The notes under the pieces are model-generated. The model was not told the DNA's origin. It saw nothing but the letters and a program-made list of their open reading frames with translations, and made no database searches. Below, piece after piece: positions 2,634 to 25,552 of a DNA stretch of 64,000 nucleotides. The stretch comes from Trichosphaerium sp. ATCC 40318. Taxonomy: Eukaryota; Protista; Tubulinea. Each line of letters begins with the position of its first letter. Position 1 is the stretch's first letter. Both the position numbers and the translations under genes were made by a program. The DNA lies in contig JALMLS010000612.1 of assembly GCA_038496445.1 (NCBI GenBank), positions 186,001 to 250,000 of the forward strand, given 5' to 3'.

Positions 2634-3299
2634 TACTGTTTAACGAAACTACGAATAAACACATGATACACTGCATGTTTGATTCTGAATAAACGATTGC
2701 ATACAAAAATTTAGATTGATTGGACTGACATTGATAATACAATCAATCTGGGAGGAAAGACTGTCAGTGTTTGGTGTATCTGGTGTAGCCACACGAGCGT
2801 ATTTATTCTACATTTAGACAATCGTGTGATATGCAAAGTTGGAGTTGAAAGCTAAAAGGAACACAAAACAAGGATTTTAGGTGCCGTAATACTTGATTGA
2901 TTACCATTATCCCTTGAGTATCCCTGCGTTTACGCAGTGATAACTAGACACAAATTTTCTCTGGCAGCAGTTTTGGCTTAAAGTTTCACTTACATCAATC
3001 TCAGTTGCGACTCTTCATTCATTAAGGCAAAAGAAATATAATTCAAAAAATATATATAGAACGGTTTTGCTACTGGTAACGCATGACTATTTGTAGGTAG
3101 CATGAAGCATCTGCAAGCACGTCTCTTCAACATTGTTTTTTTGACACGTGTCAAAGGAACTATTAACTGAAGTTCCTGTGACACGTATGCAAAATTGTAA
3201 GTTCCTGTACAAGTTCCTCTGGTTCAAGATTTTTATTGAAAAATAAAAACCAGAATACATACAGGCATTACAACATCTAACCGGCAATCAACTTAGTCT

Positions 3300-6200
3300 A
3301 TGATGATAACAATACTCAAAGTTTGTACTCTTTTGCTACTTGTCTACGTAGCGAAAAGCGCTAAAAGGTGCCATAAAATCATCAACAATACTTACTTACA
3401 CATCACTAGTGGCGTTAACAACAATATCGTATCGATTTTGGAGGCAGCTTGCGAACAATCGCCATGGGTACGTAACGTCCATAAATAATACTTTTTTATG
3501 CTCAGTCGCTGGTGCGCACGTTTTCTTAACCGTCTTTGATAGTGTCCAGACATGCAGAGATTTGCTGACACGCTAGCACACATAAGCTCCAGTGCATTCA
3601 AAGTGCCCATTATAGGGCCATACAGTACCGGTTCGTATTCTAATATGGCTAAAAAACACTTTTTGACAAAAATATAAAAGGTAAAACGATGTGTTTGAAT
3701 GCACTATTGGGCGGCAAGATTAGCCCTTCAACTGATAGAGCAAATACTGGTTGTATCATTTACATAGAATATGACGAAACGGCAAATGATACAACTCTAA
3801 TAACAAGAAGTAACGATGGTGTAGAAGAAATACTCGTTTATGGAAATGATAAAGTTCATGACAAGTACGAAAAAAAAAAATACCTTTTTTCTTAATGCGA
3901 ACCCACGTGACATGCATTTTTGATTTAAGGGCGTCCTACCACAATGACCTTAACTATTTTATACATTCTTTAAATCAACTGTAACTCATCATACTACATC
4001 CTCACATGCAATAAACACGCTAGCCTTTAATTTGGCTTCGAATATTAATGTGACGGTTTGTATTTTGGGTTTTTTCACGCGTTTTCTGGTTCTCAATTAT
4101 ACATTCTCTGATTTCGCTTATACTACATCAATGCTACAAAACCACCTATTAAACATGATTTGAGATAAATTCAGCTTTGAATATAGATTTTAAGAAAAGT
4201 GTTTAGCTTAATTTGGAAAGAGAATCTTAATTTAGTATTTTTTCTTTTTTACACATTTATGAATTGGATTTAAACGTAGGCATAGCACCACCAGCACTAT
4301 TAAAAGCACAATAACAAAATTTGAAGTTTGAATACTGGTTTTATCTTGAGTAATGATGTAAAATACTCTAAAACGCGTTTATATTGCCATAAAACGCATT
4401 TTGGATACTTTTCGTTTTTGGAAAGTGAGTTTGAACAGTTTTTTTTTTTCAATTGTTTAAAGGCCACCAGAGGTTCTACTCTAGAGCGCTGTTCTGGTTG
4501 AACTAGGTGTATGCAATATGCAACCTAAAAATCAGGCCATTTAAGGCACTCTGGTCATTGTGGTAGGACGCCCTTAAGATCGAGTTGATTCTTTAAAAAT
4601 ATTTCATGCGTAAGTTTGTTTATTGGCGCATAGGTTGATACAAGTTAATTCACTTGATTTGTTTACAGATGGCCCAGTATTACAGTTTACAGACCTTGAC
4701 CTAGTTGTTAAAACTAATAATATCATGTTGAAACCAACATCAGACGATGACTTTCCTCTTACTTTAATTGACACTGGAGGATATAATGATGTTGTTCAAA
4801 GCAAAGCTGGTCAAGTATGTAAAGACAAGGTTCGTACCCTTCACTTTAGCTTGTTCTCATTTTTTTCTAGTCAATCGCTCAAGTGGCTTCCTCTGATGCC
4901 ATTATATTCATGATAAAATGGGGAGGCGATCAAGCAAAGGATCTTAACGAGCAAATAGAATACGTACTAAAAGTTAGACCTCTATTCTTCGAACAGAACA
5001 GTCATCGTCTTTTTGTGGTTGTCAACTTTTTAAACAAATGTATTGATTCGATAGACAACGGTAAACCAGAAGATCAGGACGACCACAGCTACTGCTACTC
5101 TACCCTCAAAAAAGCTGGGGTAGATGCGTTTCATACAGCTGGTATATCAATAAGCCAGAATCAAGTCTTTCCAATAAGTGCCAGAGATGCTCTTCTCGCT
5201 CGCATATGTTCAAATGCTAAGCTCTCTCCCAAAGAATCTAAGTATGTCATACAAATTCACAAAAGTGCAACACTTAATGTTACCTTTTAGGGTTCTAGAA
5301 AGGGTGTTAGATAACAATCTTGGTAGATCTGAAGCGTGCTCCGCTGTATTAGAAGCTAGTGGTCTTCCAGAGCTTGAACGTGCTTTGAACAAATTCTTGG
5401 CAGAAAACAGAAAACATGTAAAGCATGTGGGAAATATTGAAGCGGTACAAGCTGCCATACAGACACTAGAAGAAGAAGCGCATGGTGCTAAGATAAAAAG
5501 AGAACAAGAGATCAAAAAAGAAAAGCAACTGTTAAACAGTGTTGCATCTCGATTAGATGAATTAGAGGTATGTACAACTTTGGTTGCGGTACTTTTTGCG
5601 AATAGCCACGTGATTTGTGTGGTTTCAACAAAAAAGCTGTTTCTTCAAATACAAGACAAAACGTAGTTGCACTTACTATCCTACAAACGTTCTCATTTCT
5701 TATTTACCCAGGTGGATGGTATAAACACTGAGTTGGAAGCTACAGTGACATCAGAAAGAGAAAAACACAGACACTATCAACAAAGTTGTAGTGATGCTGT
5801 TTCTAATTATATCCATTCAGTAACGTCCTCAAATAAAGGGAATGTAGAAAGTAAACTAGAAAGCGATTTTAATAGCTTTGTTTCAGCTTGGGGATCACCT
5901 GATATGTTTCCTCATAAATCAATACAGAAAATCTGTGATGGACTAGAAAAAGAACACGTGATATTACAACAATACGGATATACTTCAGATTTTTCTTGCC
6001 CCACTTTAGAGAAACCGCTAAATATTGGCTCTTCAATATCGACACTCAAGAATCAAATATCATCCGCACATGTACAACATTGTGGTCACTGCGGTTCACA
6101 CAAGGGCAAAAAGAAATATAAGTATTTTGGAAAAAGAAAAACAATTTGCAACCATTGCCATATTTATTCTACACCAACCACACATCTTTCTTCATTGATG

Positions 6201-6532
6201 CGTAAACAATGCATCACATTGAACAAGCATTTCAATAGCATCAACACAGCTATGTCAAAATTGAGATCCTTAAAAAAAGAAATGAAACAGTTTGCAACCA
6301 ATGTCAAACCAAATGAAGATACAATCAAACAAGCAGACGAATTCCTCGCACAAGTATCACCCTCAAAGCAAACCTTAAATGACATGAAAGTAATAGTTAC
6401 ACTTGCTCCCAAAGTACTTCAATATTACAGGTAAGTTTGTTGTGTCAAAAATTTAGCTAATTTTGTTGCTTAGTTATTTCGTTTGGAGCTCCTATGATTG
6501 GTGATTCACAGGTAAAAGAAGCAGCTATCTAA
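3300..6532 (+). CDS. Dynamin-like P-loop GTPase with signal peptide and coiled coil, copy A; lipase domain deleted/truncated (possibly a pseudogene)
   Basis: G1 IIGPYSTG|KT, G3 LIDTGG, G4-like VVVNFLN, FPISARDAL and SGLPELERAL (bacterial-DLP-like). Deletion junction ...TLAPKVLQYY joins in frame; premature TAA at 6530-6532 in the residual lipase exon. Confidence 0.8.
3929..4573. mobile_element. 645-bp non-autonomous DNA transposon (MITE) with TTAA target-site duplication and GG..CC termini (Kolobok-like), intronic
   Basis: Perfect 21-bp TIRs GGGCGTCCTACCACAATGACC (3929-3949) and its complement (4553-4573); TTAA at 3925-3928 and 4574-4577; the paralogous site at ~23011 has a single TTAA (empty site). 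Confidence 0.95.
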
Positions 6533-6577
6533 AAGAAAGTTGAAGACCAGATACACAACTTTGTCAGGAAGGTACAG

Positions 6578-6885
6578 AACCACTTTAGAGAAACCGCTAA
6601 ATATTGGCTCTACAATATCGACACTCAAGAATCAAATATCATTTGCACAAGTACAGAATTGTGATTACTGCGGTTCAAACAGGGGCAAAAAGAAATATGT
6701 ATTTATTGTACAATAAAACAAGAAAAACAATTTGCAACCATTGCCACATTTATTCTACACCAACCACACATCTTTCTTCATTGATGCATAAACAATGCAT
6801 GAATGACACTGAACAAGCATTTCAATAGCATCAACACAGCAATGTCGAAGTTGAGATAATTAAAAAGAGAAATGAAACAGTTTGG
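6578..6885 (+). pseudogene. Degenerate tandem re-duplication of the ~6001-6295 exon segment of the GTPase gene
   Basis: CCACTTTAGAGAAACCGCTAAATATTGGCTC...GAAATGAAACAGTTTG is repeated with indels and stops; the shared peptide KTICNHCHIYSTPTTHLSSLM is in ORF 6604-6828. Confidence 0.9.
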
Positions 6886-17831: not shown

Positions 17832-18314
17832 TCAAAATGTTTGTATTTTTATCGAAAACGCTGGCTTTCTTGGCTTTGTCAATTGAACTTGAGCACCATT
17901 TTTATACGTTACTTCAAACATTAATTTACCACTGATGTGCCACCGTTTATATTTGCCGTGAAGAATACCTTCCTTGTAATGAACTTCGAGTGCTTGGTTT
18001 CCATCATCGAACCATCGTTTTAACACGCCATGACGTTTGCCGTTCTCAAAATGGGCTCTTTTGTACAAATAAGGCGAGTTGTTAAAAAAACTCTTAAAAT
18101 CACCGTGTTTATCAAGGTTATTATCGTATCTTGATGTGACAGCGGTTTGGATACATAGTAACGGCCACTTCAAATAAACTTCGTGAGTTAACGAAAAAAC
18201 CGCGTGTTGTAGTTCAAGTGGAAGCTTCAGAAGCGGACAGATGCTATCTGAGTCATTTGATTCATTGCTTTCCCGTACATCTGTTATCTGCCTTCGCTTT
18301 GGCTCATTCGCCAT
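17832..18314 (-). CDS. Intronless F-box-like + MORN-variant (YwqK-like) repeat protein
   Basis: LLKLPLELQHAVF (F-box-like), then HGDFKSFF / NGKRHGVLKRWFDDG / EGILHGKYKRWHISG repeats. Confidence 0.75.
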   Translation of the reverse strand: MANEPKRRQITDVRESNESNDSDSICPLLKLPLELQHAVFSLTHEVYLKWPLLCIQTAVTSRYDNNLDKHGDFKSFFNNSPYLYKRAHFENGKRHGVLKRWFDDGNQALEVHYKEGILHGKYKRWHISGKLMFEVTYKNGAQVQLTKPRKPAFSIKIQTF

Positions 18315-18453: not shown

Positions 18454-19857
18454 ATGTTACAAACACCAATGAAGCACTGTCTCGTATGTAAAAACCCTTG
18501 TGGTTCTCAAAGCGTTCCTGTCGCGTATTGTCAGAGCTCTAAAAAAATGCTGTACTCTTGTTTGCCTTGTTCAGGTTCAGCGAGGTCTTTTTATACTCAA
18601 AAACTGAATAAAAGTCGTGCAGGTCGCCGTAGGCAAAAACCCAGGGAGTCTCGTAAACGTAAAGCCAGATCAACGCAAAAACCACAATCTATCATTCCTG
18701 TCGCTTCTCCACACGGTTCTCAACAAACAACAGTAGCCTCACTAGATTTTACCCACGTAGTATTCGACTCGAACTGTTTTATTGAATATCTACCTTGTAT
18801 CTCTGCCCTACACAACTACGGGTTCAAAGTTGTTGTCCCATTCGTAGGTACGTCCTTTTTCTTTATTGTAAACTCGCGCAAGATAAAGTGGAACGCTGTA
18901 AATAAAATGTATTCCATTGACCCTATAGACTTCGTTTCTTCGTCGCCTAGACAGATCGTTCTACAACTCAGTTCCTAGCTTGATCTCTTTTTCTGAAATT
19001 CTGTTTTTTTTCTTTTACTCACTCTGTTCTAGTTCTACAAGAACTCGACGGTCTCAAGAATGGCAAAGGTGACGTTGCTTACAAAGCTAGAAGAGCGATC
19101 GGAACCCTCTATGATATTCTATCACGCGACAATCAAACATGGCTCAAAGGACAATCCCTTAGTGAACGTTTCTTTACAAACTTTGGAAACAACGGAAACA
19201 ATGATGATTTGATTTTGGATTGCGCGTTGTTTTACCATAACAACGTAGCAAAGAATAAGACTATTCTAGTAACAACGGTACGTAAACCAGGTTTTTGCAG
19301 GCTTGACTTTTTTTCTTTTTCCGCAAACAATAAGCTCACTCACCTTCTAGGACAAAGCTCTTCTTGTTAAGGCTAAATTCAATTCATTGAGATCTCAGAA
19401 AACAATTGATTTCTTGAAATCTCTACCTCCAGACGCCACGATTCAATTCGTAGAGCCAGACATGAATCCCAGACCAAAGAAAATTGCGCGCGTAGCTAAA
19501 ACCGTGCAACGCGAAATATTCCCTGAACCGAAAAAAATAAAAAAACAAGCTCTTGACGCTACCCATCCGGCGTTAATTGCTCAAAATATTGATTTGTTAC
19601 CACCAGAGTTGTGGACTAAAATTTTAACACATTGTCACCCAATGGACGTTTTAACAGCCACACCGCTTGTATGTAAGCGATGGCATAACTTAGTGAACAG
19701 AGACTCCGTTTTTCGCTCTTGTGTTCGAAATACGTTTAATGATACTCAAGACGTACTAATACCAAAATTAAGGAACTCTAGGAAGTGGTATATTCAATGG
19801 AAATGGCAGACTTCTCCGTCATCACTTAAGGGTATAAACATAACCAAATACTTGTAA
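18454..19857 (+). CDS. PIN-domain (SWT1/SMG6-like) nuclease fused to a C-terminal F-box, with an N-terminal Cys cluster
   Basis: VVFDSNCFI, VPFV|VLQELDGLK, ARRAI, NNDDLILDCA, ILVTT|DKALLVKA; then IDLLPPELWTKILTH...VCKRWHNLV; introns ~18848-19032 and ~19278-19350. Confidence 0.85.
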
Positions 19858-20075
19858 ATAATTGGTAAAAACCATCTTGTACTTTAGAAATAAAAAAAAC
19901 TAAAACAAAAATCTGCGTTGTAAGCTCTCAAGAACCCTGAACAAAGTATCCACTTAAAAATACCAATCATTCCAGTTTGAAACTGGCGTTGTAATATTTA
20001 TCACACATGAAGCGTCATGCATTTTAGTGTAAACCGTTATCTTAAATTACTTTTTTATTCTATCTCAAAACTTTC

Positions 20076-23000
20076 TTACTTTGTGTTTTCCTTTGTTTGA
20101 GCATGTATTACACCTTGTAAATATCCATCGTATTGTTCCATAGAATGTTTATCTAGGCACATTATCAAATCAATATCCATGTCTCGCAACCAATCTTTAG
20201 CTCTCGCTCTATCTATCTGTGAAATACCATCATCGAGTTCGTAGTATTCACCTATTGGCTCGTACTTTAATACATCAGAAATCTTAATTAAGTAACTAAT
20301 CCAACTTGAAACCAGGTCTGCAAAAGATAGGATTGCCTTTGGTCCCTTTAACAGTATTGACGGAACAAGGTCTCCCTTTTGAAAAAAAAAGTTAACACTA
20401 CAATAACAAAACAGCTTCCGTACCTTCCTGACAAAGTTGTGTATCTGGTCTTCAACTTTCTTTTGCCTAGCTGCTTCTTTTAGCTGTGAGTCACCAATCA
20501 GAGGAGCTCCAAACGTAATAACTAAGCAACAATGAGCTAAATTTTTGACACAACAAACTTAACCTGTAACATTGCTGAAGTACTTTGCATCTAGGTCTGC
20601 AATTAGCCTGAAGAACACCCCTTGCGCTATTGCTCCACCTAACATCTCTATATTAGATATTTATGTACTATCAGCGAACAAACCTAAACTGTGTCCTGCC
20701 AGAATAACTTTTTTGCCAGCTTTCAAGCTTTTTAGCATTAATTCCAAATCAACTTTCTGTGCTATGTCATAAAACCCTTTGTGCATCTTTCCACCAAAAG
20801 CTGGTACTTGAACAGCCTTTAAATTTACTTTAGCATCGTCTAATGTTTTTTCAAAAGAAGTCCCTAGAAATGAATAAACAAATAACTGAAGGAAAAAAAA
20901 ACCCAAGAAAGTACTTACCTCTAAAACCATAGATAATTTTGTTTTCTCCTTTTATAGTAGCCACTGTTACGTGTTCATCAAAACTTTGTTTACCAAATGA
21001 CATTACATCAATGACATCCCTTGCTATTATTTTTTCCCTAAATTTCTCATCATAGGCCGCTCTACTAATCATGGCAGCGTAATGAGTGTCCTAACATAAA
21101 ACTCAGTTTTTGTTTTGAGAATGAATTGTACCTTGCAAATTTTCCCTTCAGGTACGATACATTCCCAACTGGGGGAAAGTGTAACTATTACTTTCATGTC
21201 ATTTAAGGTTTGCTTTGAAGGTGATACTTGTGCGAGGAATTCGTCTGCTTTTTTGATTGTATCTTCATTTGGTTTGACGTTGGTTGCAAACTGTTTCATT
21301 TCTTTTTTTAAGGATCTCAATTTTGACATAGCTGTGTTGATGCTATCGAAATGCTTGTTCAATGTAGTGCATTGTTTATGCATCAATGATGAAAGATGTG
21401 TGGTTGGTGTAGAATAAATATGGCAATAGTCGCAAATTGTTTTTCTTTTTCCAAAAACCTTATATTTCTTTTTGCCCTTGTGTGAACCGCAGTGACCACA
21501 ATTCTGTACGTGTGCGGATGATATCTGATTCTTGAGTGTCGATATTGAAGAGCCAATGTTTAGCGGTTTCTCTAAAACGGGGCAAGAAAAATCTGAAGTA
21601 TATCCGTATTGTTGTAATATCACATGTTCTTTTTCTAGTCCATCACAGATTTTCTGTATTGATTTATGAGGAAACATATCAGGTGATCCCCAAGCTGAAA
21701 CAAAGCTATTAAAATCGCTTTCTAGTTTACTTTCTACATTCCCTTTATTCGCGGACGTTTTTGGATGGATATAATTAGAAACAGCATCACTACAACTTTG
21801 TTGATAGCGTCTGTGTTTTTCTCTTTCTGATGTCACTGTAGCTTCCAACTCAGTGTTTATACCATCCACCTGGGTAAATAAGAAATGAGAACGTTTGTAG
21901 GATAGTAAGTGCAACTACGTTTTGTGTCGTATTTGAAGAAAAACAGCTTTTTTTTTTACCCACACAATCATGTGGCTATTCAATTCGCAAAAAGTACTGC
22001 AACCACAAAGGTGTACATACCTCTAATTCATCTAATCGAGATGCAACACTGTTTAACAGTTGCTTTTCTTTTTTGATCTCTTGTTCTCTTTTTATCTTAG
22101 CACCATGCGCATCTTCTTCTAGCGTCTGTATGGCGGCTTGTACCGCTTCAATATTTCCCATATGCTTAACATGTTTTCTGTTTTCCGCCAAGAATTTGTT
22201 CAAAGCACGTTCAAGCTCTGGAAGACCACTAGCTTCTAATACAGCGGAGCACGCTTCAGATCTACCAAGATTGTTATCTAACAACCATTCTAGAACCCTA
22301 AAAGGTAACATTAAGCGTTGCACTTTTGTGAAGTTGTATGACATACTTAGATTCTTTGGGAGAGAGCTTAGCATTTGAACATATGCGAGCGAGAAGAGCA
22401 TCTCTGGCACTTATTGGAAAGACTTGATCCTGGCTTATTGATATACCAGCTGTATGAAACGCATCTACCCCAGCTTTTTTGAGGGTAGAGTAGCAGTAGC
22501 TGTGGTCGTCCTGATCTTCTGGTTTACCGTTGTCTATCGAATCAATACATTTGTTTAAAAAGTTGACAACCACAAAAAGACGATGACTGTTCTGTTCGAA
22601 GAATAGAGGTCTAACTTTTAGTACGTATTCTATTTGCTCATTAAGATCCTTTGATTGATCGCCTCCCCATTTTATCATGAATATAATGGCATCAGAGGAA
22701 GCCACTTGAGCGATTGACTAGAAAAAAATGAGAACGAGCTAAAGTGAAGGGTACGAACCTTGTCTTTACATACTTGACCAGCTTTGCTTTGAACAACATC
22801 ATTATATCCTCCAGTGTCAATTAAAGTAAGAGGAAAGTCATCGTCTGATGTTGGTTTCAACATGATATTATTAGTTTTAACAACTAGGTCAAGGTCTGTA
22901 AACTGTAATACTGGGCCATCGTTAAACGAATCAAGTGAATTAACTTGTATCAACCTATGTGCCAATAAACAAACTTACACATGAAATATTTTTAAAGAAT

Positions 23001-23639
23001 CAACTCGATCTTAAATCAAAAATGCATGTCACGTGGGTTCGCATTAAGAAAAAAGGTATTTTTTTTTTTCGTACTTGTCATGAACTTTATCATTTCCATA
23101 AACGAGTATTTCTTCTACACCATCGTTACTTCTTGTCAATAGAGTTGTATCATTTGCCGTTTCGTCATATTCGATGTATATGATGCAACCAGTATTTGCT
23201 CTATCAGTTGAAGGGCTAATCTTGCCGCCCAATAGTGCATTCAAACACATCGTTTTACCTTTTATATTTTTGTCAAAAAGTGTTTTTTAGCCATATTAGA
23301 ATACGAACCGGTACTGTATGGCCCTATAATGGGCACTTTGAATGCACTGGAGCTTATGTGTGCTAGCGTGTCAGCAAATCTCTGCATGTCTGGACACTAT
23401 CAAAGACGGTTAAGAAAACGTGCGCACCAGCGACTGAGCATAAAAAAGTATTATTTATGGACGTTACGTACCCATGGCGATTGTTCGCAAGCTGCCTCCA
23501 AAATCGATACGATATTGTTGTTAACGCCACTAGTGATGTGTAAGTAAGTATTGTTGATGATTTTATGGCACCTTTTAGCGCTTTTCGCTACGTAGACAAG
23601 TAGCAAAAGAGTACAAACTTTGAGTATTGTTATCATCAT
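20076..23639 (-). CDS. Full-length signal peptide + dynamin-like GTPase + coiled coil + class-3 lipase fusion (copy B)
   Basis: GTPase motifs as in copy A; lipase exons GFR|GT, MHKGFY, VILAGHSL|GGAIA, ITFGAPLIG, IHNFVRK|GDLVP, YEPIGEY, HSMEQY; stop at 20076-20078. Confidence 0.88.
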
Positions 23640-24060
23640 AGACTAAGTTGATTGCCGGTTAGATGTTGTAATGCCTGTGTGTATTCTGGTTTTTTATTTT
23701 TCAATAAAAATCTTGAACCAGAGGAACTTGTACAGGAACTTACAATTTTGCATACGTGTCACAGGAACTTCAGTTAATAGTTCCTGTGACACGTGTCAAA
23801 AAACAATATTGAAGAAACGCGCTTGTAGATGCTTCATGCTATCTACAATATTAACGTGTTACGCCAATAGTAGCAAAGCTGTCTATTTTGATCATTGCTA
23901 CTTCACTTTAATATGTTTGTTTGCAATCCTTGAAGCAGTTCATTCAGAATCAAGCATGCGCGTAATCTCGAAATTTATTCGTAGTTACGTTAACTTCGTA
24001 TCATGCACCGTAAATTGGAGGAGCAATTGGAATCCTATCAGCCAATTTTAAGCCACCAAT
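20420..24060 (-). repeat. Copy B of the inverted segmental duplication
   Basis: Reverse-complement similarity to 2575-6577; includes a remnant of the 3' end of the 1099-2633 gene at ~23930-24047. Confidence 0.95.
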
Positions 24061-25552
24061 TTTATTTCTTCAAGCTCCCATAGCACTCTACCTTCCATAC
24101 CACCATCAACCTATATCAACAACTTTTAATATCACGAAGTACAGGACCAAAAAAATGTGTTATAAAAAAAATTACCATTAATGTCTGCCCTGATACATGA
24201 AATCCAGTTACAGGCGAGGCCATAAATAATATAGCATTAGTTACATCCGCTGGTTGCCCAATTTTTCTCAAAGGAGTTGTTTTTAAAGCCTGTTAGAAAC
24301 AATAAGTTCATTGCGGCCTGTTCATATCAACCAGCTAAAGCTGTTACCTTAAAATGTTCTCCTCTGGATATAGCTTCCTTAGCCATTGCTGTTTCTGTCC
24401 ATCCAGGCGCAATACAATTAACACGTGCTCTATGATAGATGAGTAAGATCATGACTGATTTTTTTGCAAGAAACCTTTTTACCTTGGAAACAATTCTACT
24501 AACTCATTTTTTACACTGTAAAGGAAACCATACTGCAAAGCAGATTTTGTAGCAGCGTAATCACTATGTCCTGCTTCTCCAAACTTCGAAAAAAACAAAG
24601 TTAACAGGCGTTTGATAGATGGGATTTTGTAGCAAACCTTGCCAGCTGTTGATCCAATGATAACAAGAGAAGTACTATACGCCTTTCTTTCGTCTAATGA
24701 CATAGTCTTTGACTTCTTCTCTAAGCCTTTACCAAACTATACAAATAATGTAAGAAGTTGGACGTAATGACATCAAGCTTCATCCGTACATATTTGACAA
24801 ACAAGAATATACCAGTAAGATTGACAGCAATAGTATTCTGCCATTGTTCCAAAGATAATTCCCAGACCTATCCGGACAAAAAGGCTTAGTATTGTTGATC
24901 AATTTCATACAACAGACGAACATACTTTTTTGTCAGCAACTGGGAATATGCCATGATTAGCAATAAGGATATTAACGGTCTGTAAAAATAGTGTCAAAGA
25001 AAACAGAGACAAGCCAAAGTTGCTTACTCCAAATTTTTTCTCTGCAGCTTCAAAAACACGTGACACATCCTAAAAGAAGGATTGATACATGACCATACAA
25101 ACCACTACGAAACGTTAGAGCTTGTGGTATAGTTAATTAGTAATAAGCGTACCTGTGTACCTCTTCTTCTCTAGCGTCAGCTTGTACCACTAATACTTTC
25201 GTGAGCGGAAATCTAAATCACTTTTTTTTTGTACATAAAGTATTGTCTGGATATGAGGCTATAACATCGTTTAACGTATCCTTGCTTCTATTGTAATGTA
25301 ACGTTACCTTATTAGGTTAGATATGAGAGCGTATGTGAAAGATTAAGCGTCATTGTACGTTACATCCAGCTTCCAAAAACTTTTTAGCAGCGTCAACGCC
25401 CAAACCGCCTGCAGCGCCTAACAACAACGTCAACAATAATAACTGAGGGTTTATATGGTTGTTGCCTGTAATCACCACATGAGACTATTAAAACAGTTAA
25501 AACTACAAAGATAGTAGCTGCGTACACCAGATAAACCAAGATCTACGCTCAT
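24048..25552 (-). CDS. Short-chain dehydrogenase/reductase (SDR)
   Basis: VVITG|AAGGLG, ILIANHG, VNLTG, IIGSTAG, DYAATKS (YxxxK), RVNCIAPGWTET, VDGGMEGR. Confidence 0.9.

What the first reader, a model, noticed from the sequence alone, without database searches (positions are those of the whole stretch)
20076..23639. Signal-peptide-bearing dynamin-like GTPase fused to an intact class-3 lipase: candidate membrane-attack or defence effector
Seen: one spliced reading frame joins an N-terminal hydrophobic leader, a bacterial-DLP-like GTPase (GPYSTGKT, DTGG, atypical G4 NFLN, FPISAR), a long helical stalk with a CGHC...CDYC basic hairpin (KGKKKYKVFGKRK) and a lipase_3 domain with a full Ser-Asp-His triad (GHSLG, GDLVP, HSMEQY). 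Known: dynamin-superfamily GTPases oligomerise on membranes and include antimicrobial effectors (Mx, GBP, bacterial DLPs), and they are normally cytosolic without signal peptides. Inference: this may be a GTP-driven membrane-coating protein that delivers a (phospho)lipase to prey, pathogen or phagosome membranes. I know of no characterised protein with this architecture, but cannot exclude uncharacterised homologues.
Basis: partly seen in the sequence, partly recalled or inferred. Interest (0 to 1): 0.85.

Follow-up and report, generated by a model that had tools for sequence, protein, structure and literature searches.

The report
Dynamin-like GTPase fused to a lipase
A marine amoeba-type protist expresses a spliced gene that joins a greasy N-terminal leader, a bacterial/mitofusin-style membrane-remodelling GTPase, a helical stalk with a basic zinc-knuckle and an intact fat-splitting (class-3 lipase) domain, a combination I found nowhere else; what it does is untested.

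Summary
A 13-exon, 934-residue gene lies on the minus strand at 23639-20076. Spliced cDNA contigs from public runs confirm all 12 GT..AG introns. They also correct two details at the 5' end: an extra 42-nt intron, and an acceptor 15 nt further upstream.

One error-free contig bridges the key 41-nt intron (21131-21091) between stalk and lipase. Another contig ends at 23695 in template-switch-oligo letters. That makes the hydrophobic leader the true N-terminus.

Because the product is spliced, I could only search it exon by exon. The weak hits are colinear and agree:
- Dynamin_N, the bacterial dynamin helical domain, LeoBC and language-model neighbours support the GTPase half.
- Two Lipase_3 pieces plus GHSLG, GDLVP and H-x-M-E-x-Y motifs support the lipase half.

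The G4 motif is NFLN and lacks the guanine-reading Asp, so GTP specificity is doubtful. The stalk has no detectable relative among 1.84 billion proteins. No paper or database search turned up this architecture.

A 96-97% identical inverted twin at 3300-6432 has lost the lipase core. This scan's unchecked notes list other dynamin-lipase genes in the same genome.

Function, topology (signal peptide versus anchor) and any defence role remain inference. I judge it a new variant of a known kind.

The parts
23640..23695 (-). 5' UTR; mRNA 5' end at 23695
   Evidence: An X4 contig ends at 23695 followed by CCCGTACTCTGCGTTGATA, the reverse of a template-switch oligo by my recollection. There is no ATG in these 56 nt.
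20076..23639 (-). Coding region, 13 exons, 934 aa: 23639-23572, 23529-23472, 23396-23309, 23258-23075, 22954-22759, 22717-22347, 22297-22021, 21869-21132, 21090-20919, 20863-20684, 20638-20564, 20521-20424, 20375-20076 (stop included)
   Evidence: Model built. All 12 joints appear in spliced contigs.
23586..23639 (-). N-terminal hydrophobic leader, aa 1-18 (Lys at 7; followed by KSAKSG): signal peptide or signal anchor
   Evidence: It is the only 19-residue window with Kyte-Doolittle mean above 1.6 in the whole protein.
22347..23396 (-). BDLP/mitofusin-type G domain (exons 3-6, about aa 58-322). P-loop 23324-23309 plus 23258-23251, G3 DTGG 22818-22807, atypical G4 NFLN 22564-22553, and FPISAR
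   Evidence: Pfam Dynamin_N E 0.011 on exon 4. Atlas feature neighbours of exon 6 are bacterial Dynamin_N/DLP_helical clusters, score 0.85. Motifs align colinearly with E. coli CrfC/RdcA.
22021..22297 (-). First helical (neck) segment after the G domain, exon 7, aa 322-414
   Evidence: Pfam Dynamin-like_hel_bact E 0.015. PADLOC LeoBC E 0.0024, profile positions 265-339 of 601.
21132..21869 (-). Helical stalk, exon 8, aa 415-660, with no detectable relatives
   Evidence: phmmer against 1.84 billion representatives gave 0 hits. The Atlas gave nothing usable. AF2 on this exon alone gave pLDDT 45, mostly helices.
21423..21500 (-). Cys4 knuckle C-x2-C-x18-C-x2-C (aa 538-563) enclosing the basic loop KGKKKYKVFGKRK; candidate zinc ribbon and lipid-binding tip
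   Evidence: Read directly from the sequence. The low-confidence AF2 model shows a beta hairpin here. Faint Pfam hits to rubredoxin and zf-CXXC, E about 0.1. The cysteines are kept in the twin.
21091..21131 (-). 41-nt intron joining stalk and lipase exons
   Evidence: Joint 21089/21131 (cut +1), CT..AC, seen in an X3 contig (88 nt on the shorter side, 0 mismatches) and an X1 contig.
20079..21090 (-). Class-3 lipase domain (exons 9-13, aa 661-934). Ser776 codon 20690-20688 in GHSLG, Asp837 codon 20372-20370 in GDLVP, His912 codon 20147-20145 in HSMEQY
   Evidence: Pfam Lipase_3 on exon 10 (E 8e-4, profile 12-72 of 140) and on exon 12 (E 0.02, profile 98-126), colinear. Motifs read from the sequence.

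Best explanation
Shown: this is a real, intron-rich, expressed protist gene. Its single 934-aa product has five parts in order. (1) An N-terminal hydrophobic leader. (2) A bacterial-dynamin/mitofusin-class P-loop NTPase domain with G1, switch-1 Thr and G3 intact, but G4 changed to NFLN. (3) A roughly 340-aa helical neck and stalk. (4) A Cys4 knuckle with a strongly basic loop about two thirds of the way along the stalk, roughly where BDLP carries its membrane paddle (my recollection of BDLP). (5) A C-terminal class-3 lipase with Ser-Asp-His in place.

Inferred mechanism: the leader fixes the protein to an endomembrane, and I favour the bulk facing the cytosol. The G domains dimerise with bound nucleotide, as in other fusion-type dynamin-like proteins, which tethers or coats a membrane. 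The basic knuckle holds the stalk tip on acidic lipids. The attached lipase then cuts acyl chains of glycerolipids in that same membrane. That would change local curvature and stability and so help remodelling, fusion or fission, or breakdown of the bound membrane.

The gene belongs to a young, still rearranging family of dynamin-like fusion genes in this genome. That family also produces lipase-less copies.
For: The gene model and all 12 splice joints, including the stalk-lipase joint, are in cDNA contigs, and the 5' end is marked by TSO-like letters.

DLP identity rests on four different exons and four methods. These are Pfam Dynamin_N and Dynamin-like_hel_bact, PADLOC LeoBC, Atlas features with 9 of 10 best named hits being dynamin/GTPase families, and a motif-by-motif colinear alignment with E. 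coli CrfC.

Lipase identity rests on two colinear Lipase_3 pieces totalling about 35 bits against a cut-off of 22 (rough sum), plus the GHSLG, GDLVP and H-x-M-E-x-Y motifs.

There is only one hydrophobic segment, and the stalk carries net charge +9. dN/dS is 0.35 against the twin over 647 codons, so the protein is under constraint. Lipid hydrolases are known partners of mitofusin-class fusion: MitoPLD and PA-PLA1 (PMC7326814).
Against: No single exon piece reaches a Pfam gathering score. The full-length product could not be scanned or folded because it has no reference. PDB sequence searches with the pieces found nothing. AF2 of the stalk alone is unreliable, pLDDT 45.

G4 lacks the Asp that reads guanine, so the nucleotide used, or hydrolysis at all, is uncertain. 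The uncharged core of the leader is only 11 residues (V8-A18), which looks more like a cleaved signal peptide than a transmembrane anchor. No localisation, activity or condition-specific expression data exist.
Confidence: 0.5

Rival explanations
1. Secreted or lumenal membrane-attack effector. The leader is a cleaved signal peptide. The protein is delivered to phagosomes or the medium, where the dynamin-like part binds or coats prey or pathogen membranes and the lipase digests them.
For: The leader has signal-peptide proportions: an n-region ending in K7, an 11-residue uncharged core, and a small-residue site around SAKS|G. The altered G4 could mean a nucleotide other than GTP, or none. The gene was recently duplicated and belongs to a family with variable effector ends. 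The neck resembles LeoBC of the bacterial 'Dynamins' defence system.
Against: To my knowledge, no dynamin-superfamily member works in a compartment without a cytosol-like nucleotide pool. P-loop, switch-1 Thr and DxxG are kept, which argues for real NTP turnover. The Cys4 zinc-type knuckle, the odd number of cysteines (21) and only two N-x-S/T sites in 934 aa are not typical of secreted proteins. dN/dS of 0.35 shows no arms-race signal. The LeoBC hit reflects DLP homology only.
Confidence: 0.25
2. The GTPase-like half is a nucleotide-independent scaffold or oligomerisation module, a pseudo-enzyme. The protein is in essence a membrane-targeted lipase.
For: G4 is NFLN instead of N/T-K-x-D. Unchecked notes from this scan report dead GTPase and dead lipase variants in the same genome.
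Against: G1 (GxxxxGKT), the switch-1 Thr region and G3 (DTGG) are canonical and identical in the twin. Loss of G4 specificity alone usually changes the base preference rather than abolishing binding (general knowledge of D-to-N G4 mutants).
Confidence: 0.2
3. Artefact: two neighbouring genes wrongly joined, a pseudogene, or bacterial contamination.
For: Only short assembled contigs support the transcript, not a single full-length read, and some of them are mosaics of paralogues.
Against: A mismatch-free spliced contig crosses the stalk-lipase joint and carries this copy's own letters. Exon 8 is one open 738-nt exon. There are 12 canonical spliceosomal introns, the frame is intact, and dN/dS is below 1.
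Confidence: 0.03

Closest known systems
Bacterial dynamin-like proteins and mitofusins (Nostoc BDLP, E. coli CrfC/RdcA, LeoA/LeoBC, B. subtilis DynA, Mfn/Fzo)
   Same: P-loop followed by x-x-[IL]-N-A-[IL]-[LV]-G, a switch-1 Thr, D-T-x-G-x-N, a hydrophobic strand ending in N-x-x-[DN], and F-P-[IV]-S. These align colinearly with CrfC. A helical region after the G domain matches the bacterial DLP helical domain and LeoBC profiles. A membrane-directed element sits within the stalk.
   Different: G4 Asp is replaced by Asn. There is no hydrophobic paddle or transmembrane hairpin, only a Cys4 basic knuckle. It has an N-terminal hydrophobic leader and a C-terminal lipase domain. The stalk is unmatched by any sequence. 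It is a eukaryotic gene with 12 introns.
Class-3 lipases (Pfam Lipase_3: fungal triacylglycerol lipases, sn-1 diacylglycerol lipases, plant DAD1-type PLA1, Atg15)
   Same: GHSLG nucleophile elbow, Asp in G-D-L-V-P and His in H-x-M-E-x-Y at family-typical spacing. The Pfam matches are colinear.
   Different: The domain sits at the end of a 660-aa GTPase and stalk. Its substrate is unknown. Atg15 also has an N-terminal hydrophobic anchor, but it has no GTPase.
Mitofusin with MitoPLD / PA-PLA1 (separate proteins)
   Same: A fusion-type dynamin-like GTPase whose action depends on local lipid hydrolysis in the same membrane (PMC7326814). The present gene would be a 'Rosetta-stone' fusion of the two activities.
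   Different: Those are separate polypeptides with a PLD-type or DDHD-type enzyme on mitochondria. Nothing here shows a mitochondrial location.
Other dynamin-like fusion genes noted in this genome (DLP-hairpin-zinc finger-VPS9; pseudokinase-pseudolipase-DLP; a second leader-DLP-coiled coil-lipase)
   Same: The same class of G domain joined to a variable C-terminal effector, with a small zinc finger in the stalk region (scan notes; unchecked by me).
   Different: This copy has an apparently active lipase and no membrane hairpin.

Membership tests
Dynamin superfamily, BDLP/mitofusin class | Large G domain with G1 GxxxxGK[ST], switch-1 Thr and G3 DxxG | tested here: met
   GPYSTGKT, the RANTG region and DTGG are present and colinear with CrfC.
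Dynamin superfamily, BDLP/mitofusin class | G4 [NT]-K/R/A-x-D that reads guanine | tested here: not met
   The motif is N-F-L-N; the Asp is Asn in this copy and in the twin. This lowers the claim 'GTP-specific', not the fold assignment.
Dynamin superfamily, BDLP/mitofusin class | Profile match above the curated threshold (Pfam Dynamin_N, 27 bits) | tested here: inconclusive
   Only exon pieces could be scanned. Results were 16.2 bits on exon 4, the DLP helical domain at 14.9 bits, LeoBC at 15 bits and Atlas score 0.85. The full-length scan was not possible.
Dynamin superfamily, BDLP/mitofusin class | Helical bundle or stalk after the G domain, with a membrane-binding element | tested here: inconclusive
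   The region is predicted helical, but the model is poor. A basic Cys4 hairpin is present. Membrane binding was not tested.
Dynamin superfamily, BDLP/mitofusin class | Nucleotide-dependent G-G dimerisation and stimulated hydrolysis | not testable with these tools
   Needs biochemistry.
Lipase_3 (class-3 lipase, alpha/beta hydrolase) | Profile match to PF01764 | tested here: met
   Two non-overlapping colinear pieces scored 19.7 bits (profile 12-72) and 15.2 bits (profile 98-126). Each is below the 22-bit cut-off, but the rough sum is above it.
Lipase_3 (class-3 lipase, alpha/beta hydrolase) | Ser in GxSxG, Asp and His of the triad | tested here: met
   The triad is S776 in GHSLG, D837 in GDLVP and H912 in HSMEQY. 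Assignment of the Asp and His rests on motif resemblance, not on a structure.
Lipase_3 (class-3 lipase, alpha/beta hydrolase) | Lipolytic activity | not testable with these tools
   Needs an assay.
Secreted proteins with a cleaved signal peptide | n-h-c leader with a (-3,-1) cleavage site, recognised by a trained predictor | not testable with these tools
   No predictor was available. By eye there is an 11-residue uncharged core and a possible site after S23. A signal anchor cannot be excluded.

The most novel reading that the evidence does not exclude
An amoebal membrane-attack machine. A dynamin-like NTPase has left the cytosol: it carries a cleaved signal peptide, and its G4 is altered so that it uses ATP or no nucleotide. 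It coats prey or pathogen membranes inside phagosomes and digests them with its own lipase. This would be a functional analogue of GBP/Mx-type immune dynamins with the effector built in, and part of a diversifying family with exchangeable effector ends.
Probability: 0.12. Interest if true: 0.85.

Novelty: new variant of a known kind. Interest (0 to 1): 0.55.

Why it matters
Dynamin-like proteins reshape membranes mechanically. Lipid-modifying enzymes such as MitoPLD and PA-PLA1 are thought to help them, but as separate proteins. A natural covalent fusion of a mitofusin/BDLP-class NTPase with an intact lipase would be a direct 'Rosetta-stone' argument that the two activities work on the same membrane patch. 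It would also give a compact system for testing that coupling in vitro. The leader and the Asp-less G4 raise the further possibility of a dynamin-type protein working outside the cytosol, or with a different nucleotide. The recent twin that lost only the lipase core offers a natural control.

Tried and rejected
Searches that found nothing:
- phmmer of the 246-aa stalk exon against 1.84 billion representatives gave 0 hits, not even a self-hit, so this genome is absent from that library.
- The search for homologous proteins with the G-domain exon gave none. The length window of that tool excludes full-length kin anyway.
- IMG/VR, JGI metagenomes (twice) and prokaryotic genomes gave no relatives with the exon pieces.
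- tblastn against plasmids gave none.
- PDB sequence searches with four exon pieces gave only chance hits.
- NCBIfam gave nothing relevant.
- Atlas searches with the stalk and the last lipase exon gave nothing usable.
- Literature searches for dynamin plus class-3 lipase architectures found no description, and two recent dynamin-superfamily surveys leave out the Mfn/BDLP class.

Steps that gave little:
- AF2 of the stalk exon alone gave pLDDT 45, too poor for a fold search.
- Fetching E. coli CrfC relatives to build a local profile returned only close CrfC homologues (78-100% identical), so I built no profile from them; a direct phmmer comparison with RdcA/CrfC had given only 5.7 bits around the P-loop.

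Steps left out: Pfam, HHpred and AlphaFold on the full-length product, and SignalP-type prediction. The spliced 934-aa product has no reference, and I did not type long sequences into tools.

Readings rejected: mis-joined neighbours, pseudogene and contamination (see the rival explanations).

Full report
WHAT IS THERE

The window is AT-rich (about 37% G+C) and eukaryotic, with very short GT..AG introns. On the minus strand between 23639 and 20076 I assembled an open frame from the six-frame translation.

Laying contigs of four public runs on 20000-23700 gave intron-less contigs with 13 joints. Twelve of them are CT..AC on the + strand, which is GT..AG on the gene strand. The thirteenth, 21091/21234, comes from a divergent copy and is described under the family. 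Eleven of the twelve match my predicted introns exactly. They also move the next acceptor 15 nt upstream, so that intron is 23471-23397.

The corrected model has 13 exons and encodes 934 residues. Although the runs are not labelled as RNA, they must be cDNA for two reasons. They carry the spliced form at every intron. One X4 contig also ends at 23695 in letters that read as the reverse of a template-switch oligo (my recollection of that oligo). That marks the mRNA 5' end. The 56-nt leader has no ATG, so the hydrophobic N-terminus is real.

THE KEY JOINT

The 41-nt intron between the stalk exon and the first lipase exon (21131-21091) is bridged by a 936-nt X3 contig. That contig has no mismatch from 20052 through all the lipase exons into exon 8, with 88 nt on the shorter side. 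It is also bridged by an X1 contig.

At 21174, 21176 and 21219 the X3 contig has this copy's letters, not those of the paralogue. An X4 contig of 1518 nt runs from the 5' end into exon 8 and has no mismatch over exons 4-7, where the paralogue differs at 19 positions. Exon 8 itself is one uninterrupted 738-nt exon.

So the GTPase and lipase halves are on one mRNA. The reservation is that the middle of exon 8 is covered only by short contigs that mix paralogue variants. A single long read is still missing.

DOMAIN IDENTITY

Because the product is spliced it has no reference, so I could only hand in single exons. I left out full-length Pfam, HHpred, AlphaFold and signal-peptide prediction rather than type the sequence.

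The exon pieces give weak hits, but they are colinear and agree with each other.

For the N-terminal half:
- Pfam Dynamin_N on exon 4 (E 0.011).
- Pfam Dynamin-like_hel_bact on exon 7 (E 0.015).
- PADLOC LeoBC on exon 7 (E 0.0024).
- Language-model neighbours of exon 6 are bacterial Dynamin_N, MMR_HSR1 and DLP_helical clusters (score 0.85, 9 of the 10 best named hits in one clan).

A pairwise alignment with E. coli CrfC/RdcA, fetched from K-12, lines up five elements:
- the P-loop with the following x-x-[IL]-N-A-[IL]-[LV]-G;
- the switch-1 Thr region;
- L-T-L-[IL]-D-T-x-G-x-N;
- the strand ending in VNKFD in CrfC against VNFLN here;
- Q-[IV]-F-P-[VI]-S.

For the C-terminal half, Pfam Lipase_3 matches exon 10 (E 8e-4, profile 12-72) and exon 12 (E 0.02, profile 98-126). 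GHSLG lies at the exon 10/11 border. GDLVP starts exon 13, where the profile's Asp strand falls. H-S-M-E-Q-Y lies 75 residues after the Asp.

Treating the second hit in each half as a hit to one pre-specified family, the joint chance is about 1e-8 or lower. This is my inference from the listed E-values.

The stalk exon has no relative at E <= 0.001 among 1.84 billion representative proteins. AF2 on it alone is unreliable (pLDDT 45). It shows helices plus a beta hairpin at the Cys4 motif.

NOTABLE DETAILS

(i) G4 is N-F-L-N. The Asp that hydrogen-bonds guanine is Asn, in this copy and in the twin. In many GTPases this substitution shifts base preference (general knowledge). I therefore call the domain an NTPase and do not assume GTP.

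(ii) The only hydrophobic segment is aa 1-18. It contains K7 and is followed by KSAKSG, leaving an uncharged core of 11 residues. That looks more like a signal peptide than a transmembrane helix. However, every known dynamin-superfamily protein works where nucleotides are abundant. In addition, the protein has a zinc-type Cys4 knuckle, 21 cysteines and only two N-x-S/T sites. I put a cytosol-facing anchor at roughly 60% and a lumenal or secreted fate at roughly 30%.

(iii) The Cys4 knuckle with its KGKKKYKVFGKRK loop lies about 215 residues after the G domain and about 95 residues before the lipase. By my recollection of BDLP, this is close to where the lipid-binding paddle sits. The stalk is net basic, +9.

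FAMILY AND SURROUNDINGS

An inverted copy lies at 3056-6884 on the + strand and is 96-97% identical in DNA. This scan had already noted it on this window (s1-404470).
- It keeps exons 1-8 in frame, with 23 amino-acid differences and dN/dS 0.35.
- A deletion equivalent to 21169-20588 removes the lipase core, and the frame stops at aa 654.
- Its specific variants appear in the cDNA contigs, so it is expressed too.

Further divergent contigs point to more expressed paralogues. Examples are one with a 15-nt deletion at 21021 and a different joint at 21091/21234, and pieces that are 90-95% identical. Unchecked scan notes list a second leader-DLP-coiled coil-lipase gene, and other DLP fusions (VPS9, pseudokinase, OTU/LRR), elsewhere in this marine amoeba-type genome.

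Neighbouring genes are unrelated: an F-box-like gene at 19387-19857, a MORN-like gene at 17832-18314, and a short-chain dehydrogenase-like gene at about 24100-25100.

HOW IT MOST LIKELY WORKS (INFERENCE)

The protein would be a membrane-bound, nucleotide-regulated lipase and membrane remodeller:
- The leader fixes it to a membrane.
- G-domain dimerisation tethers or coats.
- The basic knuckle engages acidic lipids.
- The lipase hydrolyses glycerolipids in the engaged bilayer.

The precedent for such coupling comes from separate proteins. Mitofusin-dependent fusion relies on MitoPLD, and PA-PLA1 shifts the fusion/fission balance (PMC7326814).

There is no arms-race signal, no induction data and no defence context. 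The LeoBC hit reflects shared ancestry of DLPs only.

NOVELTY

I found no paper describing dynamin plus class-3 lipase in one protein. Two recent superfamily surveys leave out the Mfn/BDLP class. No relatives turned up in viral, metagenomic, prokaryotic or plasmid collections with the exon pieces.

These blanks are weak evidence. The pieces are short, the tools have length windows, and the library lacks even this genome. I rate the gene as a new variant (a new domain architecture) of known kinds. It is moderately interesting and worth a full-length structure prediction and a simple biochemical test.

Noticed in passing
window 3056-6884 (+): An inverted twin of the gene, 96-97% identical in DNA. 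Exons 1-8 are intact (23 aa changes, dN/dS 0.35). A deletion equivalent to 21169-20588 removes the lipase core including GHSLG, and the frame stops at aa 654 (about 6432). Twin-specific variants are present in the cDNA contigs, so it is expressed. This scan had already noted it as s1-404470.
   Followed up: partly
window 3925-4577 (+), inside the twin's intron 4: An insertion of about 650 bp that is absent from the studied gene. It has perfect 25-bp terminal inverted repeats (3925-3949 and 4553-4577) and is flanked by TTAA on both sides, where the studied copy has a single TTAA. This looks like a piggyBac-type MITE inserted after the duplication.
   Followed up: partly
window 6584-6884 (+): Just downstream of the twin's remnant of exon 12 lies a second, 86% identical copy of the stalk segment 21576-21287. 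It includes a Cys-knuckle-like stretch. This is a local rearrangement of unknown consequence.
   Followed up: no
window 20921-21234 and 21336-21697 (contigs of X4 and X1): cDNA contigs 90-95% identical to the gene. One has a 15-nt deletion at 21021, one a 6-nt insertion at 21566, and one a different joint at 21091/21234. They point to further expressed paralogues elsewhere in the genome.
   Followed up: no
window 19387-19857 (+) and 17832-18314 (-): The neighbouring ORFs look like an F-box protein (LPPELWTKIL...) and a MORN-repeat-like protein. There is no evident link to the gene studied.
   Followed up: no
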